DNA of 64,000 bases. Origin: Styela clava. Taxonomy: Eukaryota. The first letter of the stretch is position 1, and every line of letters begins with the position of its first letter. The stretch is taken from positions 8,618,001 through 8,682,000 of the forward strand of contig NC_135264.1 of the NCBI RefSeq assembly GCF_964204865.1, in the 5' to 3' direction. Below, in pieces: positions 8,377-64,000 of the stretch. Under the pieces are notes generated by a model. That model did not search any database. It saw only the letters and a program-made list of their open reading frames with translations, and was not told the origin of the DNA. The position numbers and the translations under genes are program-made.

Positions 8377-8758
8377 ATGGAATCCACAAATTCAGAATAT
8401 GCAGCAAGTGCGGTAGACTACAAGGAGTTCGCAATAAAAGCTATGCATTCTCTAATTAACCGTCAACAAATCAAGCAATACACAAAATGCAAAACTGTCG
8501 AAGCGAATCGACACAGAGAATCAAGATATTTTGTAAATTGTCGTAAAAATTCTACGCTAAGAATTAACACATTCCCTAGGAGGACGAGCTTCATTAACTT
8601 TCCAAGTTGCATGAAATGGATCATTGTTACATCACAAACAACTCACTGGAACATGCGATTGATGAATATTTTGGCGGGAGTTATCTTCGTAACGTTATTT
8701 TGTGGATATTGTGTAACAGCCCAGGAATCGCTAGATTTTAGGAAGGATGTCAGACTGG
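8377..8758 (+). CDS. LAMA1/2: Laminin alpha candidate first exon A (signal peptide)
   Basis: [35 protein letters not shown] (ATG 8653; frame open from ATG 8377) ends at G|GTAAGT, phase 1. Joined to 25823 it gives [12 protein letters not shown], matching the vertebrate alpha1/2 N-terminus (..RGLFPA.LNLA). Confidence 0.75.
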
Positions 8759-11700
8759 GTAAGTCTTAATCCCGTATATTGCTCAAATGTTCGATTGTAA
8801 CGAGTCATTATAAAAAAAAAAATATGGAAAATTAACGCCACTGTTGAGCCCATCGACTCGAACCAGTTTATCGTTTGTTTGGTATTGTAATTGAGGATTG
8901 TTTGTAAACATCACTCCCTTTTATCTACTCGCATTTCAAACTTTACTGTAAACACATTGCAAACAATTTCTATGTACTGTATTATCGCCATACTTTTGTG
9001 CCATCGTTGAATAAGTGACAATATGCAAACTGGACGCACATTTAGTGATTATTTTACTAAGACATTGGGTGTACAGCAGTGGGCCATTGCGAATCCGGGC
9101 GTAGACAGACTGATTGTACACGACGCCCAAAAGGAAATAGTGGTCGTACCTGAAACAATTTGTCGGCAACATGAGAGGAAAATTTACGCAATGAGAACTT
9201 TAATGTATAGACGAGTCTGCTTATCACGACAGATTCAAAACCGATTATTTGGAGTCCGGTGTTCAATTCGGAATCAGGTTACGCATAATCTTACGCACAA
9301 ACCAATTACTTGATAATGAGAACTTGAACGATCTTACCAACACACGTAAGCTTGATATCATCCAAGCACTAGAAAGGAATTATTATCAATAAAATAATTG
9401 CGGTTTGTCAAATTGATAGGAAATGAATCTTGACTATATATTTTAGTACTGAAATCACTATTAATTGCTAATAACAATTGTAAATGGAATATTTTGGCAT
9501 TTTCGGTTTTGTTTCGTGGTATCAACTCAATTTACTGCAAATTGTGGATATTGTAGAATTACGACATGTGGCGCGCCATTGGTGGACGATTCAAATATCA
9601 TTGTAGAGCTAAACTGACGTCACTGTATCTAGTTTCACAAATGTGCGCTGCTGTATTTCATTCCCACAAGTTAGTACGGAACCGCCATTGAGAAAACACG
9701 CTTCAGTATTTTCTTTAGACTCCACATGGGGTTTCAAAGGCATTCTATACCGCTGAAACAATTCCACAACGCTGTCATGGATTGTGAGTACACGAGTACG
9801 AACAACGTTGTGCAATATTAGATTTTATTAGTAATTGTCTGAAATATTTTGTTGTCGTCTTGTAAACTTTGTGGCAAGTAAACAATACTGATATGCCGCC
9901 ACATTTTTATCCAGACAAGGAAACTGGATCGAAATCCATGTTTTCTCTGACCCTAACAATAAAACAAAGTATATGAAAGGGCACAAAAACAATTGAATAC
10001 AACGTGATAGTATTTACAAAGCATGTTTACAGGTGCTGTGGAAATATACACCGTGGTTACCTCACTTGATGTAACCCATGTATAGGGTTTTAACGACTAG
10101 TGAGTTAAATTCGAGTCGCAATGCCGTTCTTTCTATTCCTATTTCCTCTATCTGGAAATATACATGAAATATTGATAATACGTGTTACAGTTAATACACG
10201 ATTCATTCCGTATAGTCAATTAAAACATAAAATTCTCTGAATATGAATCGCGATTTTTGTGCTATTAATAACTGGTTAACAAATAGAATGGTCACGTAGC
10301 GTTAATATAAGTCAATATCAAATATTTGATGATGGTGGATTTTTCATGAAGATATAGCGACATATAATAATGAAAACTCGTTGAGGTATTTTGTTACGAA
10401 AGACTTTTGTGTTTTATCCTCGTAAATTAGTATTTTCTATATGAATCCAATTACCATAAATAGTTTGAATCTAAATTATAACATGCCATGTGGAGCAAGA
10501 GTAAAATATGAAGTAAATGCAATGCTGAAATAAAATCATAAACGTTGAAAAATACACAAAACGGCCCAATTCGCCACGTTACTGTAGTAAATTGAATTGA
10601 GTCTTTGAAAGTCAAGCGCATATGAACCGAAGCAAATCTTTTATGATTTTGAATTTGTATATATCACATTTGACAAATATTTCGTTGTATTTAGTTCAGC
10701 ATGGACACCCAGTAACATTACTAAGAATGTCAAAACTGTGCCAAATCTAAAATGTGAAATCTTACAAGGAAAACAATATTAGTAAAAAATGACATATTCC
10801 ACGTATGTGACTCTCTGTGAACGTAGATCCTGTACATGTGTTGTCATAATGTCTCGACCTTGAGATAGAACAAACACAAAAGAACACAGACCCGATAATC
10901 TTATCGTTCACCTTTTGTGTACAACTATTCTTTGCCTTTGATGGTCGAAATTGCCGCATAATCCCAGCCTATTGCCGCGGCAATGTAAACTTTGGAACGG
11001 AAAGTTGACCGTGTTTCTTTAGCTACTACCCCAATAATCTCCCCCTACCGTCTAAACGGCACAGGGTACAGCCAGCCCTTTGACACGTAATAAAAGAGCA
11101 TTAGCGTCGCTTGTCATTCCATTGCGTTTCCGAGCCTTTGTTGTATTCCTCGAAATTGGACTGGGGGATTTATCTCCGAAATCTGTTATTTTAGAGTCAG
11201 ATTAAATAACTCTATATTATAAATCTGCCTATATTAATATCTTTCTCAGTATTCACGAAGCCAGAAAACTGTGCGAAATAAAGTAGGGTATGAAATATTT
11301 TATAGTGCATACGGTACGGAATTTGACTATATTAGCACCGAACATATAATCACTTGCTAAATCAAATCAGGCTTTAAATTTTTATTCCCTTTGTTAATGC
11401 ATTTTTTTCATACTTACTCATAATAATGTATATAACATTTCTACCAAGTGATAAAATAATAGATGACAGCATATGACACTACTTGAAAATACATTTGGAG
11501 TTATGAAATGACGATACTGGTAATGTCATTCGCGTTCGCAATAATATCTATATATTCACCTAACGTGTATGCACTATTTTCCTATGGTCCCAATATGGTT
11601 CATGATCATCAAGATTGCACTGACCTTTGACCATAGATGGTCGTAATTAAATGAGAGAGCCATAGATCACCGAAAACGGGAAGCTATAACCTGCATGTCG

Positions 11701-14700: not shown

Positions 14701-17700
14701 TGCACTGAACGGAAGTTTGCTTTTCGTGGTCGTCGTCGTTTTGTGCTATCTCATTCACCATAACCGCTCAATACGCTTACTCACTATGAATGTTAATGTC
14801 GTAGTATTTATAGTTCTATTATACTATAGTTTGAATTTTACGTTGTGGGTTTTAATCGCGCCGGGTTGTGTGACACGCCAACAAAAATCGTTGTCGCTGC
14901 CGAGTCATGTGTTAGCAAATGTCAATGCAGTTAAAAGTGAGTTTACGACAATATGTAGGTCAACCTGCTTTACAGTGAAACAGTGGAAAATTCACTGTAA
15001 ATTATACAGGGCATATCAAATCGTTTCTCGCGTACAAGCAAAATTTCCCTTGCGCCCGGATTGGTCGCCTTAGTATGGAAATTACCAGAAACACGATAAA
15101 AATGTCTATAGATATAGTATATCTGATACACATAATCCGAAGATAAGGAAAACGTCAGCGTCAGGTTCGAACGTTTTCACACGCTCATATTTAAGGAATT
15201 TTAAGCCCAGACACGAAATGAATAATTTGTATGCAACCAAGTGCAGGCCCCATCATGCCAATGAAAGTAATCGATGCCCATTACATAAAAATATAGAAAC
15301 TGACATAACACCTTGACATTGTATGTGAAATTGGAGGCACAAGAAACTACTCCCACTCATGAAAAAATGTGGATGATTCATCCTGAATTACTTTTTGAAT
15401 ATGGATAAACGTCCATGAAAACACTATTTATCTAAGAAATGAAGTTGATAATATCACAACAGACAAAAATCTTAAAATTTCAAAAAGTCCCGTTCAACAA
15501 ATTTAGTATTATTAGATCGACAGTCTTGGTATCTGTGCCATATCTTTCTACGACGGATATTGGAGAATATATAGGATATTAGCGAAACACTAAATCTTTG
15601 TAAGTTCGACGAAAAACACCTGGAACGGCAGACTAATTTTGCAGCTGGTTATCACTTTAGTTTATATGTCGTTTTTATGTGAAATCGTGACTTGAAATAA
15701 CTAAATCTATATTGTAAAATTTATATTTATGACTTTGTATATTATAATATTTTTTCACGCAAATTGGAATATATGTTTTTTTAATTGTTAAAACTTTTCA
15801 TTATGTCTGCCGACTATATATATATATAGTATATGAGATATTTCTAATATAATAATTTGGTCTACTTGGGACGGCAATCTTTTCGGATTCGTAACATAAA
15901 TTCCTCATGATATTTTATATATTTAGAATGTCGAATATTATTACGAAAAAGGTGTCTTGAGTTCATTTTTTTGAGAATTAATTACCCGTCATAGTGTATT
16001 TTGGGGGATATCTAATTGAATAATCATTTAGACAAATGGAATGAAATAGCATTCTCACCCACTGCATGTACATCGTTATATGAGTCAGTTTACTCTCCTA
16101 CTCAGAGTGTTGAAATTATCTTTTGTATCTCTTTCTCAAATGAGTTTTTTCATCACGACATGCTCCGCGATTTTTCATTCTTTGAATTTTCTCTGTTGTA
16201 ATATACATTCCAAAAATGTGACATTCAAATAAAATAAACCGGACGTTGAACCTACCGCCTGCCGTTTTATTATTTGGCGCGAACGTTGATTTTGCAATAC
16301 ACAGTCAGAAATAAACGTTTTTCTTAACAAATGTTTGAGTTTTGTAACTCTGTACATATAACTTTGTTTGCTCATTTGAAACGAGGCGCAGAAAGGAGAG
16401 GTGCAATCAAAATGTAGTAAAATTACCTGCTTTTCAAAACAATCCGTGTCTGTTTGACGCATGCATATGACGTGGACAAGCTCGAATGAAATGTGATGTT
16501 GGTGTATATACATTGAAATTACTCAAAAACTTAATATTTTATTTTAAGTATTAATATGAACATGTTTGCTGGTGACTAAGCTGGATCGTCTCATGGGTAA
16601 TATGGTGTCGAGGTCATCAATTGCGTATATTGGCAAGGCCTCAATTTTGTCACATTCTATGCAGATGAGGTTTAATTAACTACAAAATCTAATTATAATC
16701 TTTAGCGTTATTGGTTGATAAGTGACATGTATAGGTAATAGCTAATTCTGATGTATTGCTTGTATTCGTCAGTTTATTGAGAATAGTGGATCGACTTTGT
16801 TCTAATTGCACGACTAAAAAATCCAGATTGCATAGCTTGCAACCAAAAAGGCAAAAAGCAACGGACATTATGACGCCACAATATCCCAATATTATGTTCA
16901 GTCAGAGAAGCATTTAGTTCAGATTAGTATTGCTGTTACAATAGTGAAAGCAAGTTACCTTTCATTGCAGTTAATTTCGTTATTATTGTTGAAAAATAAC
17001 ATCTTTTTTAACATTATCAATTTAATTGCAAAATACCGGCAATCGAGTAGCCTACGAGATAAGCTTTTCCCATTTCGTTGCTGTTGTTCACAAAACAAAA
17101 TCGAATGATCTTCTTTGTGCTTGGAATTAGTGATGTGGCTCAATCTGTTATAAAAGGTTTATTAAAACATTAATTGAATTGCTTGTTATCTTCTTGTTCC
17201 AATTGAGCAATTTTCTCATAAATGAAAAAGCAACTAGCATTTAATTTAATTCAGTATTTAAATTCTTTTTATGTGTAGTCTTTTCAATGATTTGAAATAA
17301 TCAGTATACTTGTAACACTTGAGGGAATTAGCTGTAAAAGTTGTCGTAATGAAGAGTGCTCCAATGTCCAGAATGGTTTTTCAAATTAGTGGGCCTTTGT
17401 TACCAATAGACATGTTGTGCTTTGCTGTTTCTTGTTTATATTCATAATCCATGTGCTTCAAATCATTGTAACTTCGTACAATGACACTTGTCATATTACG
17501 AATGAAACCTCAATTTTCTGAGAGCGTATTTGAACGTTGGAATTAGTCTGTACTGGAAGTATGGAGGGAAATATATTTTATAGATAATCAAATATTGACA
17601 ATGAACACATTGCATAGTAATTCATTTATTGCTGCATACAATATATCGATCTGGAATGCACATATTATAACAACAAAAAGTTGCAAGTTTGGAATTATTT

Positions 17701-20700: not shown

Positions 20701-23700
20701 AGGTTGGCTAGCATTCATGCCAATTTATAATAATTAACAACAAATCGTAAATTAAGCAAAATGGCAGACTGTTTTTTAATAAATTTCTTGCAAGAGATAA
20801 TCCAATTTCGTGGCCTATGTACTTCCATTTTCGCCTCGACTCGATGCTTACAATTCACCTCATAGTTCACAAAAATAGAATTTGTTCTTCCATTCAGATG
20901 TCACCACCTTACCATTACTTTTGCTTAAATATGCCGCGACGCGAATTCCTATTCAAAACTACCTTACGTAATGATTGTGGAATAAAATTCCATCCCATTA
21001 CGGAAGCTAACAAGTTAGAGCGAGGATTTAATTTTTCTTCCGTTTGGCCTAACCCAGCTATGTTGAGTTATTATAGTCAATAATAACTAATGTTGCGCAA
21101 ATAGGTTTGGTGTAAAGCCCTTGAACAAAAGCGGTCGCGTTAAAGTGGGGGATACGGATGTCGTGTAGTGAAAGGGCAAGCAACGACACTTGAAGATATT
21201 TCGCCCGATACTTGTCGCAAAACTTGAGAATAATTTCGTTAGCAGATGTGAAGGTACACAGCGATAGGGAAATTGAATCGCTCTTTATTTACCAAACATG
21301 AGCCAGAGATAAAATATAAATGATTTTCATGGCATCATAGTTGATCTTTGAAGTAATTATGATTTAGTAGTTCGAGTCTGGAAAGAAATAGCGAATGGAA
21401 TAGATATGTACTTAGCAATGAGAAACGTAATAATTACCTTCCCAATTTAAAACTGTTTCAGTTAGAAGCTTTTGTAATTTAATACAACGTAGCTGGTTAA
21501 TTTCTCATAAGTTTTTTAAAAATATTTTTTTGAGTAATTTGGCAATCAATTTGAGTCCTACATTCGACATCTTTCAAACTCTGGAATTGTCTCTAAAATT
21601 GTAAAAAAGGTGTATTTTACAAGTGCCTTACTTAATATGATCATAAATTTCAAATATCCTTCTGTTCTGAGTTTTTGTGAGTATTGGTATAGTATAGACA
21701 AGACGCCGATGAGAAATAGATCCAATAGCAGACATGAAAACGATAAAATTCGCCCAATTGTCATATGAAATGTCGTAGTAAGCGACAAAAAGTTGCTTTC
21801 GCGCACCCGATAAACGTTTTGTATTTTGCGGACAAAATGTGACATCTGAGGCCACGCTTATACATTACAAATGTCGATAAATTTAAAAATCTTGAAAGAT
21901 AACAGATTTCATAACTGTTGAGAATAACGTAAAAATTATTCGAAAATTGGGTCGGTGACTTCAGTAGCAAAATAACTATTTTGGATTGAGTATTTGATTC
22001 TAGTAATACTTTAATGTTACATGGTCATTGATGCTCTTAGGTTGCCAATCAAATTATAGTTCCAATAATATTTCCCACAATTACCTAGATCGTTTTCTGA
22101 TTAGTTTTCATACGAGTGTAAATTGAGGGTATGAGAGAGTGAATAAGATGCAGTTATGCTAAACTTCTACTACACGTCTTTCCCATTGCTTAGCGACTTG
22201 GGTAAATCTGGTAAACTAAATCCCATAACTCAAAGTAAATAAACAATCGAACAAGTTTAGTCTACTTTGTGTTTCTCTTTATCCGAGGTAAGCTTATAAT
22301 CTGCCAGGAAGGATCAACAAATTAACTCCAGATTTGGTATAGTGTCAAGTTTCGGAATTTTCATACATTCTTCCCATGTAGACCTATTTGGTTTGTTTGT
22401 ATGTTGGCATTGAAGGCCAAATTGATAACCGTTTCACATAAGAAAGTATTAAAAGGTTTTTATGATCTAAAAGAGAAGAATTGAAAAACGTGTTCAATGT
22501 GTTCAGAATTACAATGTCAGCGGTTTATTATGTTCAAGTAGTTGTCAGATTATGACTGGTTAAATTGTATGTTTCAGCCTTTTTTTCTGTTGAACTCCCT
22601 CCCTAAACTTAGGGCTGTAATTAGCCTTTTGTACCACAATTTTTCATATCTCTTCTAATATTTCAATATACCTACATCTGAGTTTGTTGCCTATTTAATT
22701 CGTGGTTCTGCTTTACAAATGTATAACCCCGTTGAACAGAAGTTATAAGTGCTTGTCTGTTCACTTCACCAAGTCTTTCACCACGCCTTTAAACGAGTAA
22801 CATAAATAAACATCAAATATAAATAATGTTCTTTCAATTCCTCTAGAAGTGTGTGCCTTAGTATGTCAAATGTGCCAAAGCTTAGAGTAAGAATTTGAAT
22901 TGTTACAAATGGCATACAATAACTCTTCAAGGATTTGCAAGAGAAGATTGTAAATTTTTGGCAACAGCTTTTTGTGTCATGACGTCACCAAAGTCTGTTA
23001 GCGTTTCTGAACAAGAGTCGGCATCGTGGTGCAGTGAACCTCAAAAGATGGCGGAAAACGTATCAATGCTGTCAGCGTCTGATGCGGTTATCGAGGACAA
23101 AATTTGTTCAGGCCTTTCAGATTTAAGTCAAGCGTGCCACGTGACCCCTTGTGCTTTTGAGCAAAGGAAACGATCAAACTTAGTTTCAAAGGTTTTTGAT
23201 GAAGGATTTACAAACTCCGACATTTTTGAGGATATCACTCATATGAAAACCGTCTTCAGAAAGACGCCCGCTTCATGTGAAATGCGACAAATGAGGAGAC
23301 ATTTAGCGACTCAATCCTCTTCTCACGTTACAAAAATATCTTCAAATTGTCCAAAAAGGCAATTTACTCAAATCAACGATAATTATATGAAAGAAACCTT
23401 AACGAACTCCAGTAGAAAATCTTTCGTCAGAACAATTCAACCATGCAACAGATTATGTACAAAGTGTCGTTCACGTCATTTTAGTCCTTTAAAAAACCTA
23501 TTTATTTATTCGGTTTTCGTCATTGTCATCTTCCTGGCACACCATCCTGTGTTGTCTGCTAAAACTCGGCATCTGAGGAAGCGACAGCGTGATACAGATT
23601 TAGGTGTAAACGAAATTATTATGCCTATGTTTCCGAATGCTGGATCTAATGAAGGTACAGTTTCAATGACATAGATTGTATTTAATCGTATAAAAACTAG

Positions 23701-26700
23701 GTGACAGTTACATACTAATTTCTTATTTTTTCACCACGTTTTGCGGAACAGTATCGGTGTATGCGTTCATTCTTCTAACCAATGTGGAAATAGGGCCCGT
23801 TCATGTTCAAATTTCTGAATATTTAACTGATTTCATTTGCATTGCTGTGTTATGGCCGGTTAATATGATTCTGATAGCAACTGATTTTTGAGGCCAAAGT
23901 ATGGTAACAGAGCATATGGTATACCAGCCAGTTTCCCACCCGTTTCCAAAACCATCCCCGACCTTTCATGAGCTTTATACTATTGTTACGTAGGAAGTAT
24001 TTCTGACACTTGGCAAATATCAGCCACTATATTTCAAGCAATATAATACTATAGGTCTGCCCACATTTTTTGAAAAAAAAGGTGTGTCTCCTTGTTTGCT
24101 TTTTATCAAAGGCGAATAAACCGACGATTAAATTGAGTGTTCCCACATTGTGTATCTGTTAACACCATCGCTTTCTTAAGAATGTTTATTTAAATAGTAA
24201 ATACACAACGGGAACATGGGTGAAGATTCAAAATTCGGCATAGGAATATTCCACCAACACTAATGAATTCTTCTAATAATTATATTAAAGCAGAATGCAT
24301 TACATTCACATGTATAAGAAAAATTCCGCATGCATTTAAATTACAAAAAAAGAATCTATTGAATAAACTTAAATTCCACATATTCGAGTTTCCTTCATGT
24401 GTACAATAAAAAATTAAAATTGCATAACATCGTAAACTCCTGCTGATGCACTCGGACGAATTCGATTAAGCATTTCCCAGTAAAAATTTTATTTTATTTT
24501 GTTCATCAGAAGACCATGAAGATTTTATACCAACTGCCTAGATTTAAAACGATAATTATGATCAAAACCGCGATTTTGTTAGTTGCATAATTAATTGATA
24601 AATGATGTCAAAATTTGTGTTACATTCAAGCAAAAAATTGACCTGTAAATATTACCTTCGTGTAACTGTTTATATGCGTATGAATTGAACCATTTTTCAA
24701 CATATCTTTGTTTGATTACGCTACATCAAGATATATTCAAAGTTAATCATTAACAATCTTGAAAAATCACAAATTTAGTGATATTTTCACGTATTTCAAA
24801 GCAGTATGATCATCGTTAAATCACTATTGGTAATGATTTCGCGAAGTTTTTACATTGTTCAGAGTTAAATACAGTGAAATTGCATTTAATCTGTCAAATT
24901 TTTAGTAGTAGATTATGATATCGTATTATTTTGATATTTGGTGTGACGTATAACAAACGTATCAAGTTTCTATTGCGGCTTACATGTATTACAATCGTAT
25001 AATCATTCGACACCAAACACGCCGCCGTGACCTCTAATTTTGCCAAAATTAGTTTTATTCAACAAAGCCAAATTTTATTATCCGTGACGTTGGTATACTT
25101 TGAAGTACCTTATTGTTAATGTTCGAGTAAAATTATATTAATATCACCCACATCACAATGAAAAAATTGATAACACCACAACAACTTGAACCTTGGTAGT
25201 CAAGGAAGCTCTGATGCGCAGTTGTATGACTTAAACAGACACGGGTGAGAAGGCGCGTGTCTGTGAACAATTTTAAGAGTTTGGCGTGTAAATAAATTTT
25301 AAACTAACCGGTATCATTAAACTAAATCTTTCATCGGAGTGTTAAGAAACATTAGTGAAATGATTTATACGCCGGGAAACAATTTATCGCATATTTCAGT
25401 TCTTAAATTTCATTGGAGAATATTATTCATACATGCTTTGATACTTCAAGGATATGGTTTCTTGAAAATGAGAATGAAACACGGGATAATGTGACACGAG
25501 CTATGTCAAATAAAGGGTTAGTGGTAAATTCCAATAAAATGAATAATAATATTAACAAGGGAGCGATGCTCAAATATTTGGACAAGAAGACCAAAACGAA
25601 ATAGTACGTTATGCAATATGGCACAGTAGACTACCGCCACAAGGTGCGCAATTTTTAATTTTAATGACGTCATCGAAAGACGATCGATTTGTAAATTTTG
25701 TGTTCCAAAATTTGTTTAATGCATATAGCATGTACTTCGAAACCAAGTTGAACTAACGACCCCAGCGTCTTCCAAATCCAACATTTTTGTTGCGAATATC
25801 ACTATATTTACATTGTTTACAGGTCTTTATCCGTCAATGGTGAACCTCGCCGCTCAAGCTCGTATAGTCGCAAATGCTACTTGTGGTGAAAATGGCCCAG
25901 AACAATTTTGTAAGCTGGTAGAACATGTTCATCGGATATCAAGACGACGACGGAAACGGAGTCAATGTGACGTGAGTGTTGCAAATACTAGTGGCGTTAG
26001 TGTACAGATCAGTCTTTAAAAATCCCAATATTTATGGCGCATATAGTCTACCGATGATGTTTCTCCGACCCTTGACCTCAGAGAATTCCTCCTTATACTT
26101 TACTATTACAAAATTTCGGATGCTCATAATGCGAGTGTTCTGGAGCTTACAAATTAGTTTACATGTTCATAACTATCATTTTTATTGAAAACATTCATCC
26201 ATGTGTCGCTTGCAGGTACTGATAATAATTTTAGCCTATAGTCTATCGCAGTTTTTGATTATTGTACGTAAACTGGAGCTCTTCGAAAGACTATAGTGGC
26301 CTTTAGGTTATTTCATTTATAACTAATTTTCGGAAACACTACTGAAAATTGACAAATAACACACAAAACCACTAAAAGGAGGCTACGTTTACAACCATGC
26401 TTGGGTATCTGTATGAGGGAAAGAAGTGTCTAAGCGGCTGCACAAATTGCAATTGTTACGTCATTGTTGACTTATTGCTGTTTGGTAATTGTTACGGAAA
26501 TAAACAGGTAAACCAATTCTAGGAGAAACGTTCATAGTATCGTAACGAGCCGATGAATTCTCATGGATGTATTCATTTCATCTCCTTGGGTCTATACATC
26601 TCTTACCAATGAGCACCCTTTCCGTGATTCTATTCCCAGCTTTCAGACATTCTAGTTGTTATTCCCGGTTTATGCAACTGATGGGAAATTGACTAGATTA

Positions 26701-29700
26701 GATATTTCTAACAACTTTTCATTTTGTGAAAATAGATTGAATGGGGGAATTAACTTCTAAAAAATTACTGTTCCACATTATCCTTTCTCAGATATGTTCT
26801 TCACATCCTCATCAAAGTCACGATATCGAATATGCAATCGATGGTAGAGGAAGTCGTTGGTGGCAAAGTCCTACTATAAGTAGTGGATACGAATACCATT
26901 GGGTGACAATTACATTGGATTTGAAACAAGTATGTTCTATTTTTCTAACTTTCTTCAACACTTTATCGACTGATAAGTTTCCCCCTTATTTTGCTAGGAT
27001 TGATAATACCAATCGGCCATCGCAGGGTACCAACTGTAGTCTGTTCTTTGCAGTTATCATGGTCGCACTGGAATAGAGAAATAAAATTAATTGCTCGCGC
27101 CTTTATAGAGTATTTCCATGTGCTTTGCGTGTGATTTAGTCATATCCTCAAGAAACAAAATTACTTTTTGCGACATGTTTTATGAGATTATTTCGCTGTT
27201 TGTTTTCATACTCGAAAATCGTCTTAGTCTAGACAAGGAGTACTTGACAATTACGACGTTCATAATAAAGCTGTAGGTCATAACTTGTTATTTTGTTGTG
27301 TTTCATTCACCAACTAAATAAACGCAAATTTGTGAAAAACGCATGAAATATGTTGGTAAGCTTGCGTGATGCAATGTAGATAATGAAATGCACTATCTGT
27401 ATGGCATCATAGCACCTGATTTTTGCAAACAAGTAAGAACAGATTACATCAAGTCAAAATTGAACATCTGAAAATTAAGTTCTCAGTTAGATGAATATAT
27501 ATTTTCCAAATGCCATTTTATTGATTTCCTAATAGACATTGAGTGAAAGTACTGCTACTACACAAGTTACTAAAACTCTCAATGGATAAATATATACATT
27601 TAAGCCAATATTCCGTTTGTACCAGATAGGGGGATATCGTATTGCTCTTCCCATAGTGAACCAAGCTGGATTAATAGGAAAAATCATTTATATCAGTGAC
27701 TCTAATATTGCGATACAACATCGTCCTAAATAAAACCAGCAGAACAAGAACCATTGCAAATGTTGAATTTTTTTATCGTTCATTAAATGCCTTTCTTATC
27801 AGATAAGTTGGCTCGTTGTTTTCATACTTTCAACACAATAACATACGCCCACTTGCGTCTGAGTAGGACCCAACCAGCTGTGCGCGTGATTAATTTTTAC
27901 CACACTGCCGACGTCTGAAAAAACACGAGCTTGCATGGTTACTTTATTAATTTTTTACAAAATAAAATACAGAGATCTATCTAGTTTACGTACTTCCTTA
28001 GGTATGTGGAACTGTCGATGTATCCTTATCAAATCAACTTCACTTGAACGTAAACATTTCGTCATTCTTTCAAATATATAAGTACACTCCCAACATGCAT
28101 TTTATGTATTTGTTTTTATTATTATTCTAAATATTTTCGTTTATCATCGGCGCTTGCTTCTAACTTACCTTAGGCAATGGCATAGTCTTGACCACAAATG
28201 GAATTAGGGTCAATTTCAATTCCACGTTTATGACGTCGACATTTACTTCGCATGCAATGTGTCCATGGTTTGTTGTTGTTCTCACCTAAAGTGTTTAAAA
28301 ACTGTTACGATCTTGTTAAATTCATTTTTCAGTGATGTAATCTTGACTTCTTTTATAACAAAAACGCATAAATTTTACACGAATTTTGTAGTAACTAGAA
28401 AGTTATAATTGACAGGCTCAAATTCTATTCAAATATATATTTGGGAGTTCAAATCTACTGGTGGTTATTATTATAAATGTATAAATCGAATTTATCTCTC
28501 TAATAATTTTTTTGGGTATAAATCATCGCAATATGCTGAAAATTAAGATTCACATGGAAAATATAACATTCAAACTCCACAAAAAAATCATGAATAAAAA
28601 AAAACATTTTCTTCATTTTCTGTTTTTAGAGAAAATTTATTGAAAATTATAAACATGCTAGTTTTTGCTTGAACCTTTGTCATATGTACTACGCACTTTT
28701 TTTTTTATATACGACGTATTTATAAAGAACTCGCTCTGAACTAGGCTCCACATAATCAGCCACTGCTGGGTGAGTAGCTACAAGAAATGGAATCTTACCG
28801 GTGGTGGGCATGGGATTTGAACTCAAACTTTCAACCTGCGACGCCATCGCCTGATAGGTTCAACGCTTAAACCATTGCGCCGCGACCATTGCGTGAATTT
28901 ATGTAAAACAGCTTAATTCTTCCAATTTTCCAATAGTTCATTTTTTAATTTGATTTAATTTATTTTTAATAGGACAAAATAATGCGCCAAATTTCTATAT
29001 AGATCACATGTAATATGTCGTGTGCCTCTGCTTGATAATTGACTGAATTTTATCTGATGCCAAAATATATTTTCGTTTCAAAGGATTCATGTAGTACATC
29101 AAGAGGTCAGACGCATTTAAAAGATGCTATTCAAATTTACATTTACAAATTAAATTTGGCCAAGGATAGAAATAGATAATATTTTCTTTCTAATTGTGTG
29201 TTAGTTATGAATCACACTTGGTCGACTATGATAAAACAATCACCGATATTCAACCTAATGCTATCTATTATCGCCTCATTCGCGCCACAAATGCCATTAC
29301 CGTGTTTCTATTCTGTTTTGAAGAAGCATTTAAATTTGTTGGGGTGAGCAGATGTACTCACTTTATCATAAAACACTTTTATCCACTACTATATATCATT
29401 TACGCCTGGAACGGATCTATTTTTAAGACTGTCGCGTGAGTAATAAACATAGGACTCGTCGCCTTCAAAGGCGTCTCGTGCGAGTGACGTCATAGTCTGG
29501 CGACGCGGTCGCCGTGAACGACACAAATTAGCCCGCAAAGCTTGTGTTTCTATAATCACGCAGCGATTTGGTTATTGGCTTCAACGTTCAAAGATATCGC
29601 ATAAAATTAGGACAAATTTATCCAAAATTTGCGATTATCAAGAATATCGTTTTCGAATTTGTTTTATATTTACTGACAACGTTTCAAATTTTAAATGAAT

Positions 29701-32700: not shown

Positions 32701-35700
32701 TGCGCCCTTTTTTTGCGGGTGTTCGGCGGAGTCCAGTGTTTGGCTTAAGACGTATATCCGTTGCGGTTATAATGAAGTATTTCTGATATTGCAACTACGA
32801 TTACCTTCCATTAATATTTCCGCTCATTTTAACAGTATTCATTTTTAGCCACCCTCGAGATTAAAGTTAGCCAATAACCAATATTGACTTAATGGGTCTC
32901 CCGCTAACACAGTAATATCCTTATTAAATTCGAAAAAGTCAATGATCTCTCACTGGTTAATCCGCTTAGCTACGGTGCTACACTAAATCCATTCAAAGTA
33001 TATTAATAACAGCGCTGTTGGATCGCGTGGCGATTTTTAATAATGCAATATTAATTTGCTGGGTTGGCGGTACCGCATAGGATGCTGTATTGCCATTCGA
33101 TTCATTTCCGCACAAAATAGCTAGGTCCGGGTAGAAATGGGAATGGATATATTGTCACCATTCGCGAAGGATTTAATATTCAATGCGCTGTCAGATAAAC
33201 AGCATGTTAATATTTTTAATTTTTTTAAAGATTGACAAATCGTATTGTAATTGGCAATCGTGCATGCATTGTTTCCATTGAAATCGCCAGTTCATACGTT
33301 AGCTCTCTATAAAACTTGTTTTGTGCTGAATCAGAATAAACCAAATTGATATTTTGATTGGAAGTTGTCTGTATATTCATAAGCAACATCTTACTCTTAG
33401 TTTTTGTCCAGGTACAGCCGGATTTATTTGGGTTTTCAGTATCTCAAAACGTTAATGAAATAACCAAGCAATGAAAAAGCCTAAATTCACATAGTTTTAT
33501 AGCTACAAAAAACACCAGTTGATTTACGATTTGAAGTATTTGTGTTCAATTGTGTGTGAAACGCTCTAAACATTTTTAATGTAGCAATTTTAATTGCCAG
33601 ATGCTCAATTTTAAAATATATTTTCTTTTACTCTGAATCATCAAATATTTTAATGAAACTGTTGTATCTTCAAATATTCCAATTTCCAGATAAAAATCCC
33701 CTTTAAATTTCAAATAACTTAACATTTATCCCATTAATTTCTATTCGAGTCATTACATAATTGCTAACTTCCGATTTTCTGGGCTTTTCCAGGTCATTGT
33801 AGAGTCACATCAGCTTTATAAAAATAAAATAAATTTTATAGCGCATTCGTGCCGAGTGACGATTTTACTAGAGCACGTTCAGTGATCGTTAACTCGATGC
33901 ATCGATAGTCGATTTGATTTACTGCCTACATTTTCTTTGATCATTCACCTAATCTGTGATCGTAAATCGAACGACTAGACTGAACAAGACGGATTTTGAT
34001 AGATCCAACGACTTAATATGCCAGCCGTGGGCCGCGAGTTGGTCGGATTAAATGCAGATAAATAAGAACCGTCATATAAAATATTTTGGTATAAGCTTAT
34101 TACAGGCAAAATTTTGAAATTGATGAAGTAGAATGGACTTCAAGTTCCGTGAACGTGGCTGTTTCTATAATATTCTCATAAATATGAATGCCAATAATAC
34201 ACCTTTCAATTGAAATTAAAGACTTGCCATCTTTTATAATTACATATCAAAAGTCATGAATTGCAGTACTTGAGGCGATTTTGGTGTGAAATTTCGACGT
34301 CATATCGAAAACGCATTTTTCCTTGGTATGAGGAATTGTTTTTTTACTTCTGCGAGACCAACAGCGTTTGTCTAAATTGAAAATTTTGCGTTCCTAGTCT
34401 CACTACAAGACTTGCATGTCTCATGTCTATTATATCATTAATTAGTAAAATTTATAGGAGCAAAACTTCGCTTTAATTTCCATATTTCGTTATTACTTCT
34501 TATAGGTCTTCCAAGTGGCGTACTTCATTTTCAAAGCGGGTAATTCACCAAGACCAGGAAATTGGATTCTAGAAAAATCTCTCGATGGCATCACATGGCA
34601 AGCGTGGCAGTACTTTGCTGTCACGGATAGCGAATGTAGACATCGTTATCCAGCTCGAGTCACAAGAATGGGGTCACCAAAGTTTCGTTATGACAATGAA
34701 GTCGTCTGCACTTCTTTCTTTTCGCAATTATTGCCACTTCAAAATGGAGAGGTGAGTGAATATTAAATGTTTCGCATATTTTTAATTAACCATTTCGGCA
34801 TTTCCCCCTCTCTCTCTTGTCAGCGTTCCCTCATTTTCATTATTTCGTCCCTATTGCATTTCCCACCTTTTCTCTCTTCTCCAGTTCTCACGTTTTCCCA
34901 CCATTTTCATGCAAATCCATCAACTTTGCCTGAATTTAGATTCACATATCAATGATAAATGGGAGACCAAGTGCAGAGAACCCTTCTGACGAATTAATAA
35001 AGTTTACTTCCGCTCGTTACGTTAGACTTCGATTCCAGAAGATACGAACTCTCCATGCTGATCTTATGACAATCTCTGGCCAACCGGCAGAGTACGTGGA
35101 CCAGTCAGTGACGCAACGGGTAAGTCGACTTGTCAGTATACTTATCAAAACACCCACACAATTTCAAATATACCCAAATCGGAACCCGAGATTGTAACAC
35201 GTCTACATTTACACTTATTTTTCAATTTAAGATCAAACACGATACAACGGTGTAATATTGCACCTGAAATGTGCTCGAGGGGAGGGGTCAATTGACTTTC
35301 CTAGCGACCATTGTCAAGCTTTCTCTGTAATCCGTAATTTGAGGAAAATTGGCGACATCAAATACGGTTGACCGCTGATTTCCGCTCGTGGCAGGGAATA
35401 GACTCATATTAGTTAAATTGTTAATATCAAACATGGTATACACCAAGGAAGTGTATATAGACTACATCTATTTGTTCTGTATATCCTGATAGCAAGTGTC
35501 TATTTATGTTACAAACAAAACATTCCCAGATTAACCTAAACTCTTGAATGATCGTGACAATATCACTTATAAAATATATATATTATTTAATAATACTTAT
35601 CTATGATCTATATCCGATATTGTTATAGATATCTCCGATATCAATTTGTTATGACTAGTTAACTAGATTACAATTCAGATTATATTCAAGGGCTACTAGA

Positions 35701-41700: not shown

Positions 41701-44700
41701 AGCGAAACTCCTCTGAAATGTGATTTTACAATTCCACACCCGTGTTTCCTATGTTTATTATTGTTACAAGTACACCTCGGTATGATGTAAAATTATTTAT
41801 ATAGTGTGCCGTATTGCCACTACACAGTATATTCTCTGTTCATTTCTTAGTTTGGAATTTACATTGACGTTTCAAAAACCTAACTAGTTGAAGAGAATTT
41901 TACATAAAAAATTGATGTTTTATTTGACTTACATCTTACGTTAGTATCGTGAAATTTACTCTTCGGCGCTTGTTTTTTGTTTGTTTACATATTTATTTAT
42001 TTGTGTCTGTATTTATTTTATGTACACTATAATGGTTTTGCATTTTAAATTGGAGACCTGGTGTGGTAGTGTTGTGGGTTAGTGAGCGACGTAACTCGGT
42101 ATAACAAAGTATGTAATTATTATGTGCCTGAAAATTGAAGGGGTATTAGATAATATTACAATGAAATTTCAATTTATTCAAATTTTAAGAGTAGAACCAT
42201 AATTTTTCGTTTTTTCTCCAGTCTTTATTTTTTCCATGAATAAATTAAAAAAACGTATTAAGTAACCACAATCATTTAGATGATATTTCATATATCATTA
42301 TTGGAACGAAACCACATTTGATAAAATCATAGCATATAAATATACTTTGCGGACAACCATTATTGTCGGTCTATCAGAAACCCCCACTTTGTGACGTAAA
42401 ATGTAAAATTAAGAGGACATTAGAAGATTAATTACTTCTCTAATCCGTGTGAACGAAACATAAACCACAATTGTCGACCGACCTTTTTACGACCCAATTT
42501 GTATTTTCTTTTAGTAATTACTGAAAAAATCGGAAAAATATAAAAATCGAATATTAGAGTGGACCACGTCAGGGCAATACGCTAGGATTGTTTGTGTTCG
42601 GAAAAGAATATTTTGTAGCGTAATCCCTGTTCTCTATAATTCGAGACATTTAATTGCGAAAAAAATTTTCTTCGATTAATGACAGCCAAAGATAATATAA
42701 TAAAGAGTTTCTTAAAACTTCTTTTGAAGAAAGTTAATTGGCGCTACCTCAATTTCCATTGTGAATTCTAGAATCTAGATTAATTCAACTTCAAATAAAC
42801 ACTGTTCTATTTAACGTTTTCAGTCAGTTTAAACCTTTATTTAAAGCATGGAACCATAGTGAACATACTTATCTGATATCAGGAGACGGATTAAATAAAT
42901 ACAAAGGTTTTCATCAACTATAGTTTACGTCATAAGTTGGTGGCGTCATTAGCCAAGATGGATTGTATCATTGGACATACTTTCGGTATCATATGCTGGA
43001 TTCTATGGGCATATATATGCAATTGTACTTTCGGTATGCCGGCGTATAATAGCCAAAAGCATTACGTATCTCGGAGAAATTGGCATGCTCCTCCAGCTCG
43101 GTCATCTTATTATCGTATGGAGCATGACTATGGCCTCAGAAGGCGCTACGATTACGCTGCTTTGAGAGCTGTTTTACCTTCTCCTGGCTATGAGAAATTT
43201 GATATATATCCATATTCCACTTCACATCGGGTGTTATCTAGCAGAGATAAGTACCGGTATACCCCTACTTGGTATCCTATGCAAGACAGACTGATGCTGG
43301 CTAAAAACGTGTGTCCTTGTGGCGTTCGGGATAAACTTGACAATCTTCATGTAAGTTTTGTATTGTTACGTCATAAATATCAAGCATTGATGATGATCTA
43401 TGACCTATCTATGCCAGTATGCGTTACGTGGCCCTACTCTCTCCAAAGTTGCAAGCTTTTGCCGTTTTGTAAAAAATTTTTGTTTATTTTCAAAATGTCG
43501 TGTGAAAATCTGCACGAATTCACAGACGGCAAACGTGTAATTGTATCATTTTAGTTAAATCCGTACGGAAGCTGGTATTTAGAATAGGAACAATGCCTCA
43601 TAGACGAACCTGCTAAATTTACGGTTAGCCCGTCAATTACAAGCCAAGTTGTCTTATGGTTGTAATTATTTCCTTCTAGTGAAATGATGACCATATTTAA
43701 TACCACACAACATATATAATGTTAAAATCAATGGCATTTCTCCCGTGTTAAAGCATGGACAAATAAATTCAAGTCGTTTTTGAAGTTTAATCGGCCAAAA
43801 ACGAGCACATTTTGATAAAAGAGGAATTGAGCGACAACAGGGTTAATTTTGTCCATCTCTTCATAAGTCGACAGGAAGTGTTAGGTTTTTAATCCGTAAA
43901 TCATCGGTGTTTTGATTCCGGATCAGCGGATCTTTAAACACAGGTTTACCGCGTTTGGTTGTGGTCCTGTCTGGTTTTGCGCCATGAATGAAGGTGCCGA
44001 ATGTAAATTTGTATTAGGCTAGTGAAAATTATATGTGGTTTTGAATATGATATATTGAAATAGGAGTGACAGTGGGCATTCAAATTTTTTCAATACTAAT
44101 CCCAAAAGATGGTTTGATTGTTATATCAGTTGATATGGTAGGTCAAAGCAAGATTTGTCTAAAAATAATACCAATCTAATGTCAAATTTGTTCAACATAT
44201 TGTACCAAATAGCAGTCGACCCTGAACCCACCAAAAGGTAATTCGTTGAACATACTCGAGACATTCTATACGTAAAACCTGCTATATTTCTAAAATATAT
44301 AAATGTATATACGCACGCAATTATGTACATTTGCTTACTACATAGAATCAAAAACAAACAAACTACGTCATGAGAATTTTTATCCGGCAACCTTTAAATC
44401 TAATTAAAGATACACAAACATATAATTACCAACCGACTTTTGACGCCCAAAGGTTGTCGTCTGCTGGAGTCTTTTTGTTACTTTGAAACATCTGCAATTT
44501 TTAATTATCATGGTCGCGTGCTAAAATAAGATGATCTTTCAAGTTTGTCGCGTAATTATCAGTCTTAAGTGTTTTATCTTATTACCAACGAGTTATTATT
44601 TGTTTATCTATGTTTAATCATGATATGTTTAAAAAGATGCTAGAATTTTTAAAGGTAAAATATTTGCTCTTTCCTATACATTGCAAAAATTATGACAACT

Positions 44701-47700
44701 TTCATCATTTACACACTATTAAAGTATGAATAGATGTATGGTCCCGATGGACATCCGATTGGGGGCATTGGGTTGCCATATAGACGGCGTTTGTATTTCA
44801 GGGCAGTTCCACAAAGTAGTACACTCCCAATTCAGTGTGGGGTTATGTTTTAGACTTGTTCCTATCAAATCTCACAGTTTTCCAATGGTGGCCCTTTCTA
44901 CAAAAGATTCTCCGAATATATCCAGCCTAAATGAAAATAGATTTACATTGACATATAAAGAAGTTGTATGAATTTATTTCTATGATATGCTATATGAATC
45001 ATTGGGCTCACTTCCTCAGAGTGGCTATAACGACTACTCAGGGCATTGGATATGACCGATTATTATTAGTTGATCATTGGTAACTGTTAAATTTGCTTTT
45101 TTACAGTATTTCTATTCCGTGAAAGACATCAGTATCGGCGGGATGTGTATCTGCTACGGACATGCACACGATTGCCCGTCTCACGCAACAACAGGAGTAT
45201 GTACTATTATAAATTTTTTCTCATCAAACTTTTTTTTTTAAATTCCAACAAGCCAAACCAAAATACTACGCGATATGTTTCTTGTCCACGTTCAAAAAAT
45301 TTGATCTTTTTCAGAAGTTCATTTGCAAATGTGAGCATAACGCGATGGGTGATAATTGTGAGCAATGTAGACCGAAATTCAACCAGTACAAGTGGAGCCC
45401 AGGGAATGGTGGATTTCAATGTGAAGGTAAGGCTGCGTACACTGGTAATTCGGCGGTTGCCACATTTGTAACGAATTCAAAATCTTTGAAAATTTTTGAA
45501 TGATTGCAAATTCTTTTCTATTATCTCAGAATGTAATTGCAACGGGCATGCCGATTCTTGTTATTACGATGAAAACGTTGAGTGGCGAAAAGAAAGTATA
45601 AATATGGAAGGGCAGAGAAAGGGCGGAGGAGTATGCATCGATTGCCAGGATCACACAGCGGGCATCAATTGTGATAGGTATCTTCGATTATTTTTCATTC
45701 AAATATTTAAGTCCGCGCTTAAACCAATTATGAACCACGAATGATAAACGATGGACCACACTTGGTAAAGCTTGTAACTTATACCCAAATACATATATGT
45801 ACAGAGAAGTGTTTATTTTTTAGTTGTGTTGATGGATATTTCCGACCTATCAATGTACCACCAGAAGATGTGCGACCATGCAGACCATGCGATTGCGATA
45901 CCTACGGTGCTCGCACAAATTTCAATGGTCGACAAATGTGCAGAAAAACGACGGAAGATGGCGGTGCACATCAAGGAATGCAACCCGGGGACTGTTACTG
46001 CAAGGACGGCTACGCGGGTTCAAAATGCGAGCGGTACGATTTTTATTGACTTGTTATTAATATGATTAATATAATATTATTAACATAATTTTATTCGACA
46101 GATGTGACTTCGGTTTTCGTGGATATCCTCGTTGCGAACCTTGTCAATGTAATCCTGCTGGAAGCTTGAATATGGATCCTTGCCATGGACCATGTTTGTG
46201 CAAGGTAAGAAATGTGTATTTTACATCAATTGTATACTACAATTGAAAAATGTTACAAAACTGTTACTACTACACTATTATTTTACAAAATTCAGGAAAA
46301 CGTGATAGGACCAAAATGTGACGAATGCAAAAATGGATATTTCAACCTGGAGCGTCAATCTCCGCTTGGATGTGAGACGTGTTATTGTTCTGGGATTACC
46401 AATCTTTGCGAATCCGCTGTGCTGTACAGGTAAATAAATGAACTTTCATCATGCTGGAATGCTTATATACTAATGGTATATCTTTCTACTATTCGTTTTA
46501 ATATTTTACATTACCCAGTGGTTACTCCCGTAGTATGTGTATATGGTTAGTGTTGGGCCATAATTTTATTCCGATTTTCCTTATTTCAGTTCTATTACAA
46601 GTTCGAGGACTGTCTGTTTTAGCCAAGTAAATATACCCCCTGCCCATAGGTTTCAGTCCCTTTACACAACTTGATTAGTTACCCTATTAATATTAATATT
46701 GCCCAGTCGTTACTCCCGTAGTATGTGTATATGGTTAGGGTTGGGCCATAATTTTATTCCGATTTTCCTTATTTCAGTTCTATTACAAGTTCGGGGACTG
46801 TCTGTTTTAGCCAAGTAAATATACCCCCTGCCCATAGGTTTCAGTCCCTTTACACAACTTGATTAGTTACCCTATTAATATTAATATTGCCCAGTCGTTA
46901 CTCCCGTAGTATGTGTATATATATGGTTAGGGTTGGGCCATAATTTTATTCCGATTTTCCTTATTTCAGTTCTATTACAAGTTCGGGGACTGTCTTTTTT
47001 AGCCAAGTAAATATACCTCCTGCCCATAGGTTTCAGTCCCTTTACACAACTTGATTAGTTACCCCCAAATAGGTACACTTACTTCAGAAGTGCTGTTCAG
47101 TCAAACTTTAGCTTGAACATCTTGCTTATAGTTGAAGAAATTTCACAGGCGACATTTTGATTAACCAACATTTAAAACTGCTTGTTTTGAGCCATGTTTG
47201 AAGCTGTCAGCTAACTAAACTTTCGTTCTAGGAGATACATTCGAAACATGCGTGGCTGGGAAGTTGTAGACAGACCAGCATCACACACTACCATCCCATC
47301 TTATGACGAAAATTTGAACGAACCATATGTTTCACACGAAGAAACAGCTCGTGCTGTATGCACTGGATTATATTTTTGGAAACCTCCCAATGAATACATA
47401 GGTATGTTTGAAAATAAAAAACATTGATACTTTTGACATTATATCAATTATCAAACAATTTCGTAACGTTTTTTTCCAGGCAACAAGTTATCTTCTTATG
47501 GAGGAGAATTGAGATATACTATTTATTACGAGTTACCTACCAATAGTACTCAGTCATCTCCGATCAAAGATATTGATGTTATTTTGGAGGTAAGTCTTGT
47601 GACTGTTTTATGATTTAGATTATGCCTAAATATGATATTGAACTTTTCATATTTTGTTCAGGGTAATGGAATATCTTTGGAATTTAGTCGCCAAAGAGAA

Positions 47701-63888: not shown

Positions 63889-64000
63889 GTAAGCAGAAAT
63901 TCCTTTATTCATGTAATTCTTCGTGTTTTTGACTTTTCGAAACCCTAATGCTCACCGCATATAAGTTAGGCTATGAAGGCCTATCGTAAATAAGTAAAGA

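What the first reader, a model, noticed from the sequence alone, without database searches (positions are those of the whole stretch)
8377..45196. Multi-promoter laminin alpha: up to four mutually exclusive N-terminal leader exons
Seen: four separate segments each have a start codon, a hydrophobic signal-like stretch and a good donor in exactly the phase needed. A (8377/8653-8758, G|GTAAGT), B (14786-14936, A|GTGAGT) and C (22979-23654, G|GTACAG) all fit the phase-1 acceptor of the first LN exon (25822). D (42958-43350, CAT|GTAAGT) fits the phase-0 acceptor at 45106. They sit in long non-coding stretches of a gene whose 3' introns are mostly about 60-300 bp. Known: LAMA3 uses two promoters (alpha3A/3B), and agrin uses alternative first exons to switch between secreted and type II transmembrane forms. 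I know of no such switch for alpha1/alpha2 laminins. Inference: one invertebrate gene may supply, through promoter choice, the secreted, tethered and truncated alpha chains that vertebrates split among paralogues.
Basis: partly seen in the sequence, partly recalled or inferred. Interest (0 to 1): 0.88.

Follow-up and report, generated by a model that had tools for sequence, protein, structure and literature searches.

The report
Sea-squirt laminin with three alternative starts
The laminin alpha-1/2 gene of the sea squirt Styela clava has three alternative first coding exons (not four) that public gene models already use and that recur in two other sea squirts, giving full-length chains with two unusual long leaders and one chain that lacks the polymerising LN domain.

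Summary
The window is Styela clava DNA and holds the 5' two-thirds of its laminin alpha-1/2 gene. All four segments exist as described, with a start codon, a hydrophobic stretch and a donor in the right phase.

Three are real first coding exons. NCBI RefSeq isoforms begin with A (from ATG 8377), C and D, are 100% identical to the window, and use exactly the predicted junctions: 8758>25823, 23654>25823 and 43350>45107. The same three leader types, joined at the same residues, occur in gene models of Ciona intestinalis and Clavelina lepadiformis.

C and D are open frames far longer than chance gives. C is as conserved between two S. clava assemblies as the mature protein.

B is in no model, and a look-alike is expected by chance about once in five such regions.

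So the exons are already annotated, but I found no paper describing them. Promoter use and membrane tethering remain untested, and spliced-leader trans-splicing could replace separate promoters.

No RNA reads could be examined.

The parts
8377..8758 (+). Leader exon A, coding part. The annotated start is ATG 8377. ATG 8611 or 8653 would give a classical signal peptide ending ...CVTA|QES. Phase-1 donor G|GTAAGT.
   Evidence: Residues 1-127 of RefSeq isoform X5 (P0273, XP_077976600.1) are 100% identical and continue into LN1 as ...DVRL-G-LYPS. Donor 8.3 bits, top 0.6% of GTs.
14786..14936 (+). Candidate leader B: probably not an exon.
   Evidence: It is in none of 13 S. clava isoforms, and no counterpart appears in 17 Ciona/Clavelina models. 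The 126-codon frame and the ATG+hydrophobic+donor combination are within chance. It has no basic n-region.
22979..23654 (+). Leader exon C: 225 codons. About 173 residues are followed by a hydrophobic core (residues 174-188), then ...VLSA, a basic stretch and 30 more residues. Weak phase-1 donor G|GTACAG.
   Evidence: Residues 1-225 of isoforms X1-X4 (P0271, P0270, P0275, P0274) are 100% identical and joined as ...GSNE-G-LYPS. The 262-codon frame is beyond chance. It is single copy in the genome. Only 1 of 225 residues differs between the two assemblies.
25823..25971 (+). LN exon 1, the shared phase-1 acceptor for A and C.
   Evidence: Pfam PF00055 positions 2-49. Splice sites from spliced comparison with relatives.
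26792..26929 (+). LN exon 2.
   Evidence: PF00055.
34506..34751 (+). LN exon 3.
   Evidence: PF00055, E 2e-19.
34940..35119 (+). LN exon 4, ending ...VTQR in phase 0.
42958..43350 (+). Leader exon D: 131 codons, with an N-terminal hydrophobic stretch, a Tyr/Arg-rich peptide and a C-x-C-G motif 9 residues before the junction. It lies in the 10-kb intron before 45107. Phase-0 donor CAT|GTAAGT.
   Evidence: Residues 1-131 of isoform X6 (P0272, XP_077976601.1) are 100% identical and joined as ...[16 protein letters not shown]. The 219-codon frame is beyond chance. It is single copy.
45107..45196 (+). Last LN strand plus the start of LEa. Phase-0 acceptor shared by LN exon 4 and leader D.
   Evidence: Strongest acceptor class in the gene, 12.5 bits.
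45315..64000 (+). Remaining laminin alpha exons (LE, L4, coiled coil, LG1-3). They run off the window at about residue 2838 of 3356.
   Evidence: tblastn with relatives and with P0271.

Best explanation
The Styela clava laminin alpha-1/2 gene is expressed from three mutually exclusive first coding exons.
- Exons A (8377-8758) and C (22979-23654) each splice to the phase-1 acceptor of LN exon 1 (25823). Both give full-length chains that differ only in what precedes the LN domain.
- Exon D (42958-43350) lies in the 10-kb intron inside the LN-coding region and splices to the phase-0 acceptor at 45107. It gives a chain with its own hydrophobic leader and a basic Tyr/Arg-rich peptide, but without LN exons 1-4. 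That chain should not take part in LN-mediated polymerisation.
- B is a chance look-alike.

This three-leader layout is old within ascidians, because gene models of three species from different ascidian groups show it.

Shown: the exons, their reading frames and junction phases; their use in public gene models; and the recurrence of the layout in other species.

Inferred:
- That transcripts really carry these junctions. This rests on RefSeq models, which to my knowledge need transcript alignments for alternative variants.
- That each leader has its own transcription start.
- That the hydrophobic segments act as signal or signal-anchor sequences.
For: (1) The leaders translated from the window are identical, residue for residue, to the N-termini of P0273 (A), P0271 (C) and P0272 (D). 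These proteins continue across exactly the predicted junctions.
(2) Two annotation releases on two assemblies give the same three types. The old release has X1-X5 = C, X6 = A, X7 = D. The new release has X1-X4 = C, X5 = A, X6 = D.
(3) Ciona intestinalis and Clavelina lepadiformis models show the same three types joined at the same residues. A-type joins as ...G-L[FY]PS and C-type as ...W-L[FY]PS, which fits one shared phase-1 acceptor. D-type joins as ...-YYYSIKDIS. One separately deposited non-RefSeq Clavelina model (CAK8698123.1) is also D-type.
(4) Ciona and Clavelina leaders are clearly homologous for A (z 9.1) and D (z 14.9). The Styela D tail shares the [LI]A-x3-C-x-C-G motif at the same distance from the junction (z 4.0; 2-3 of 1000 shuffles). 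Styela A against Clavelina A gives z 3.2.
(5) The C and D frames are far longer than chance gives, and each is single copy, so they are not repeats.
(6) Differences per 100 residues between the two S. clava assemblies: C 0.44, mature chain 0.8-0.9, D 2.3, A upstream part 8.7.
Against: - No RNA read, transcription start or spliced-leader data could be examined. XP_ models are automatic predictions.
- The donors of C and D are weak.
- The D frame stays open for 67 codons past its donor (about 1% by chance). This would also suit a stand-alone 198-residue ORF.
- Styela C shows no significant sequence similarity to the Ciona or Clavelina C-type leaders.
- C and D have no Pfam family, no atlas look-alike, and C has no stand-alone homologue.
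Confidence: 0.8

Rival explanations
1. The three leaders are real, but the 5' diversity does not come from three promoters. One long primary transcript starting upstream of A is resolved by spliced-leader trans-splicing, or by splicing from shared non-coding exons, onto acceptors just upstream of the C or D start codons.
For: This genome carries spliced-leader RNA genes (earlier notes), and ascidians trans-splice many mRNAs (general knowledge). Acceptor-like sites with no intervening ATG lie 75 and 34 nt upstream of the D start (7.4 and 5.8 bits, top 2% and 6%). A weaker one lies 11 nt upstream of the C start.
Against: The acceptor before C is weak (2.3 bits). Such sites are common in AT-rich DNA. 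No spliced-leader read data could be examined.
Confidence: 0.25
2. C and/or D are separate small genes (231 and 198 residues) nested on the same strand, and the annotation pipelines fused them to laminin by mistake.
For: Both are complete ATG-to-stop ORFs. C stops 6 codons after its proposed donor, and D runs 67 codons past its donor. Both donors are weak. No homologue places them in a known family.
Against: The same fusion, in the same phase and at the same residue, is made in two S. clava releases and in two other species. D-type is also made by a separately deposited non-RefSeq Clavelina model. No stand-alone C-like protein of 124-394 residues exists in 5.8 billion clusters. Codon composition after the D donor looks intronic, though this measure was weak.
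Confidence: 0.08
3. B is a fourth real leader, used rarely or only in some tissues.
For: It has a good phase-1 donor (7.0 bits, top 1.5% of GTs), an ATG and a hydrophobic stretch.
Against: It is absent from all 13 S. clava isoforms, and no counterpart appears in Ciona or Clavelina. Its frame length and feature combination are expected by chance, with p about 0.2. T-rich DNA translates into hydrophobic residues. It lacks a basic n-region, and it would put Ser where all other leaders give Gly or Trp before L[FY]PS.
Confidence: 0.07

Closest known systems
LAMA3A / LAMA3B (vertebrate laminin alpha-3, two promoters)
   Same: One laminin alpha gene gives a full-length LN-bearing chain and a short chain that starts from an internal first exon with its own signal sequence and lacks the LN domain. 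This is my own knowledge, and the finding cites it too. Leader D and its isoform (P0272) behave this way.
   Different: Here the gene is the alpha-1/2 orthologue, not alpha-3. The cut removes only LN exons 1-4 and keeps the last LN strand and all LE repeats. There are two further leaders for the full-length form. Separate promoters are not shown.
Agrin SS versus TM isoforms (alternative first exons: secreted versus type II membrane form)
   Same: Alternative first exons put either a short or a long, non-classical hydrophobic N-terminus in front of the same matrix protein. Leader C has about 173 residues before its hydrophobic core.
   Different: In agrin the membrane topology is shown by experiment. 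Here it is only inferred. The segment after the core looks like a signal-peptidase site (...VLSA, ...PSTA, ...HAHA), so the chain may be released. In Ciona and Clavelina both full-length leaders have long extensions.
RefSeq models of S. clava laminin subunit alpha-1/2-like (XP_039257195.2, XP_077976600.1, XP_077976601.1 and others)
   Different: They are automatic models with no description of the leaders. There is no B isoform.
LaNt (laminin N-terminus) proteins from LAMA3/LAMA5 (PMC2790989)
   Same: They are another case of isoform diversity at the 5' end of laminin alpha genes (abstract).
   Different: LaNts are short netrin-like proteins made by early termination, not by alternative first exons.

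Membership tests
Laminin alpha chain, alpha-1/2 type | N-terminal LN domain (Pfam PF00055) | tested here: met
   Four exon translations hit PF00055 across positions 2-214 of 233.
Laminin alpha chain, alpha-1/2 type | LE repeats, L4 domains, coiled coil and C-terminal LG domains in one chain | tested here: met
   The near-identical S. clava protein P0160 carries PF00053, PF00052, PF24973, PF06008, PF00054 and PF02210. Exons for these regions align in the window.
Laminin alpha chain, alpha-1/2 type | Closest to alpha-1/alpha-2 rather than alpha-3/4/5 | tested here: met
   The best full-length relatives are Ciona 'laminin subunit alpha-2' and vertebrate LAMA1/LAMA2. No tree was built.
Alternative-first-exon (LAMA3A/B-like) isoform system | Two or more mutually exclusive first coding exons, each with its own ATG, joined to common downstream exons | tested here: met
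   Isoforms P0273, P0271 and P0272 start with A, C and D and share all downstream sequence. This rests on gene models, not reads.
Alternative-first-exon (LAMA3A/B-like) isoform system | Short isoform lacks the LN domain | tested here: met
   P0272 goes from leader D straight to [12 protein letters not shown], skipping 25823-35119.
Alternative-first-exon (LAMA3A/B-like) isoform system | Separate promoters or transcription start sites | not testable with these tools
CpG observed/expected is flat at about 1.1 and gives no promoter signal.
Agrin-like secreted/type II membrane switch | One leader is a cleavable signal peptide and the other an uncleaved signal anchor with a cytoplasmic N-terminus | tested here: inconclusive
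   A has a Met 2 residues before its core and a V-T-A|Q site. C has 173 residues before its core, with the nearest Met 37 residues upstream, but also a small-residue site after it. No topology predictor or experiment was available.
Spliced-leader trans-spliced 5' ends | Spliced leader joined at an acceptor upstream of the start codon | not testable with these tools
   Only acceptor-like motifs were seen.

The most novel reading that the evidence does not exclude
In ascidians the main laminin alpha-1/2 isoform (leader C; also leader A in Ciona and Clavelina) may be made with a long cytoplasmic N-terminus and an internal signal anchor. Either the LN polymerisation domain starts out tethered to the producing cell's membrane, or signal-peptidase cleavage releases normal laminin and leaves a 170-230-residue membrane or cytosolic fragment with a function of its own. 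Together with the LN-less D isoform, a single pre-duplication alpha-1/2 gene would then supply tethered, free and truncated chains by choice of 5' exon.
Probability: 0.25. Interest if true: 0.85.

Novelty: new variant of a known kind. Interest (0 to 1): 0.55.

Why it matters
Laminin alpha-1/2 chains are textbook secreted proteins whose LN domain drives basement-membrane polymerisation. In vertebrates, non-polymerising alpha chains come from other genes or from the LAMA3 internal promoter.

[quoted passage not shown] An ancient, conserved set of three 5' exons would have two consequences:
- Full-length and truncated alpha chains were being produced from one gene in this unduplicated sister lineage. 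That bears on how alpha-3A-like and alpha-4-like short chains arose.
- It gives a directly testable candidate for a membrane-anchored or unusually processed laminin.

Ciona allows electroporation of tagged constructs, so the topology and the tissue use of each leader can be tested quickly.

The exons themselves are already in RefSeq. What is new is the comparative reading, not the annotation.

Tried and rejected
I stopped there, so read laying was never used.
- No human-likeness was stated in those declines.
The order of the three leader exons in the Clavelina and Ciona genomes could therefore not be checked.
- The spliced model was never joined for a database search. Exons were searched singly by reference. 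Pairs of neighbouring exon pieces were joined only inside a local script to choose splice sites.
- Searches that gave nothing: C against proteins of 124-394 residues; the LN1 frame against 53-168 residues, because the length window hid the full-length proteins; the atlas for C and D; Pfam for all four leaders.
- The top representative hit P0001 looked like a same-species hit, but it was a duplicated vertebrate model.
- Codon-usage scoring trained on laminin exons was dominated by Cys/Gly composition, and true coiled-coil exons scored as non-coding, so I gave it little weight.
- The CpG profile showed no promoter islands. The bacterial promoter scan is irrelevant here.
- Transposon origin of C and D is rejected: each is single copy in the genome.
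Full report
**What is in the window**

The + strand carries a laminin alpha gene.
- Exon translations hit the LN domain (PF00055) at 25823-25971, 26792-26929, 34506-34751 and 34940-35119.
- The last LN strand and the first LE repeat start at 45107.
- Densely packed exons then follow to the end of the window.
- Splice sites were fixed by comparison with eight full-length relatives.
- Introns in the LN region are 820, 7576, 188 and 9987 bp, and most downstream introns are 68-260 bp.

**The four segments**

All four have the start codon, hydrophobic stretch and donor phase that were stated. They do not carry equal statistical weight.
- The stop-free frames around C (262 codons) and D (219 codons) are far beyond chance. 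Frames of 200 codons or more appeared 0.01 times per simulated 45 kb.
- The frames around A (142 codons) and B (126 codons) are ordinary.
- A scan for 'ATG, hydrophobic window, GTRAG donor in a given phase' over both strands and all phases finds about 0.2-0.3 loci per 25.8 kb per strand and phase. One of A or B could be chance.
- A donor matrix built from 22 confirmed introns scores A at 8.3, B at 7.0, D at 6.2 and C at 4.7 bits, against 5.4-11.2 for the real donors. Given the number of in-phase GTs inside the C and D frames, their donors prove nothing alone.
- C and D are single copy in the 377-Mb genome, so they are not transposon fragments. They have no Pfam family and no atlas look-alikes.

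**Route to the answer**

- RNA reads were out of reach.
- Exon-sized protein searches returned nothing, because that tool only sees proteins of similar length.
- A search of the representative library with LN exon 3 gave full-length relatives at about 60% identity.
- Earlier notes on this genome said it is a tunicate.
- I used the best relative, Ciona savignyi laminin alpha (P0006), as a full-length query restricted to its LN region. This returned three tunicate clusters among the vertebrate LAMA1/LAMA2 hits: Ciona intestinalis, Clavelina lepadiformis and Styela clava.
- The S. clava protein matches the window at 96-100% per exon and begins with leader C. The genome is therefore Styela clava.

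**The S. clava isoforms**

The cluster holds 13 RefSeq isoforms from two annotation releases. Their sequences fall into exactly three N-terminal types.

| Type | New release | Old release | Begins at | Junction |
|---|---|---|---|---|
| C | X1-X4 | X1-X5 | ATG 22979 | ...GSNE-G-LYPS |
| A | X5 | X6 | ATG 8377 | ...DVRL-G-LYPS |
| D | X6 | X7 | ATG 42958 | ...[16 protein letters not shown] |

- Window translations of the three leaders are string-identical to the new-release proteins.
- tblastn places the leaders at 8377-8758, 22979-23654 and 42958-43350.
- No isoform contains B.

**Other ascidians**

The Ciona and Clavelina clusters show the same three types.
- An A-type leader ends ...G before L[FY]PS.
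- A C-type leader of 268-292 residues ends ...W before L[FY]PS. G versus W fits one shared phase-1 acceptor whose exon starts with GG.
- A D-type leader of 161 residues joins directly to YYYSIKDIS. One Clavelina D-type model was deposited separately from the RefSeq set.
- Ciona and Clavelina leaders are plainly homologous for A (z 9.1) and D (z 14.9), and marginally so for C (z 2.1).
- Styela leaders are too diverged for whole-length significance.
- The tail of Styela D shares an [LI]A-x3-C-x-C-G motif at a matching distance from the junction (z 4.0; 2-3 of 1000 shuffles). Styela A resembles Clavelina A over the signal region (z 3.2). I chose these windows after looking at the sequences, so they are supportive rather than decisive.

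**Constraint within the species**

I compared old- and new-release proteins, which come from two assemblies. Differences per 100 residues were:

| Region | Differences per 100 residues |
|---|---|
| Mature chain | 0.8-0.9 |
| LN domain | 0 |
| Leader C | 0.44 (1 of 225) |
| Leader D | 2.3 |
| A signal and spacer | 5.7 |
| A upstream part | 8.7, including an in-frame 4-residue indel |

- The long N-terminal part of C is as constrained as the rest of the protein.
- The 92 residues that the models place before the A signal peptide look nearly unconstrained. In Styela they may be 5' UTR, with translation starting at 8611 or 8653.

**What the leaders look like**

- Styela A has a Met two residues before a strong hydrophobic core and a V-T-A|Q site, which is a classical signal peptide.
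- Styela C has its core at residues 174-188 and the nearest Met 37 residues upstream. Basic flanks lie on both sides, and a small-residue site (...VLSA) is followed by a polybasic stretch.
- The Clavelina and Ciona C-type leaders repeat this pattern (...PSTA then RVRR; ...HAHA then RLGR).
- The Ciona and Clavelina A-type leaders have no Met within 56-74 residues of the core.
- A long pre-hydrophobic extension therefore seems to be a general feature of ascidian alpha-1/2 chains. Whether it makes a type II anchor, an unusually long cleaved signal, or is bypassed by another start cannot be told from sequence.
- D-type leaders have an N-terminal or near-N-terminal hydrophobic stretch followed by an Arg-rich peptide.

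**Mechanism**

The best reading is three mutually exclusive first coding exons.
- A and C feed the LN1 acceptor.
- D feeds the acceptor at 45107 and gives an LN-less chain, which should not polymerise.
- Separate promoters are the default assumption. This genome has spliced-leader genes, and acceptor-like sites with no intervening ATG lie shortly upstream of the D start, with a weaker one before C. Alternative trans-splicing of one long primary transcript is therefore a live rival.

**Comparison with known systems and novelty**

- The D isoform works like LAMA3A.
- The A/C pair recalls the agrin secreted/transmembrane switch, but that resemblance is untested.
- Four literature searches found no description of these leaders in ascidians.
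- The exons themselves are already in RefSeq. The finding is therefore not a new discovery of exons. It is a correct sequence-only reconstruction of three of them, plus one false positive.
- The comparative point appears undescribed: a conserved trio that includes long-leader and LN-less forms of the single tunicate alpha-1/2 gene.

**Limits**

- No reads, no transcription start sites and no genomic loci of the other species could be examined.
- Support for transcription rests on automatic gene models.
- The joined spliced model was not searched. Exons were searched one by one by reference.

Noticed in passing
window 62731-62754 (core found at 62735-62752): An 8-residue cassette in the LG region is present in RefSeq isoform X1 (P0271) and absent from X3 (P0275).
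   Followed up: partly
window about 56161-56226: A 22-residue cassette at the start of the coiled-coil region is present in X1 and skipped in X4 (P0274). It is a second annotated alternative exon.
   Followed up: partly
window 46498-47064; related piece at about 1443-1601: Three tandem copies of a 188-bp unit (96% matches) lie in an intron. A similar translated motif on the minus strand near 1443-1601 suggests a dispersed short repeat.
   Followed up: partly
window about 25935-25960 (LN exon 1): The LN domain carries a polybasic insert (R-R-R-R-K-R) where relatives have a short Pro/Arg loop. It looks like a possible proprotein-convertase site inside LN.
   Followed up: no
window about 63600-63650: A second polybasic run (R-R-K-R-R-R-R) lies in the LG region. 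It recalls the convertase cleavage seen in LG linkers of some vertebrate alpha chains.
   Followed up: no
window 29000-30500 and 39500-41500: CpG observed/expected peaks (1.45-1.69) lie inside the two large LN-region introns. A 113-codon minus-strand frame lies at 29641-29979. These could be regulatory elements or something else.
   Followed up: no
window 22975-22986 and 42925-42950, 43360-43372: A palindromic TGACGTCA overlaps the C start codon, and ACGTCA half-sites flank leader D. These are CRE-like motifs at two of the alternative 5' exons. Chance was not assessed.
   Followed up: no
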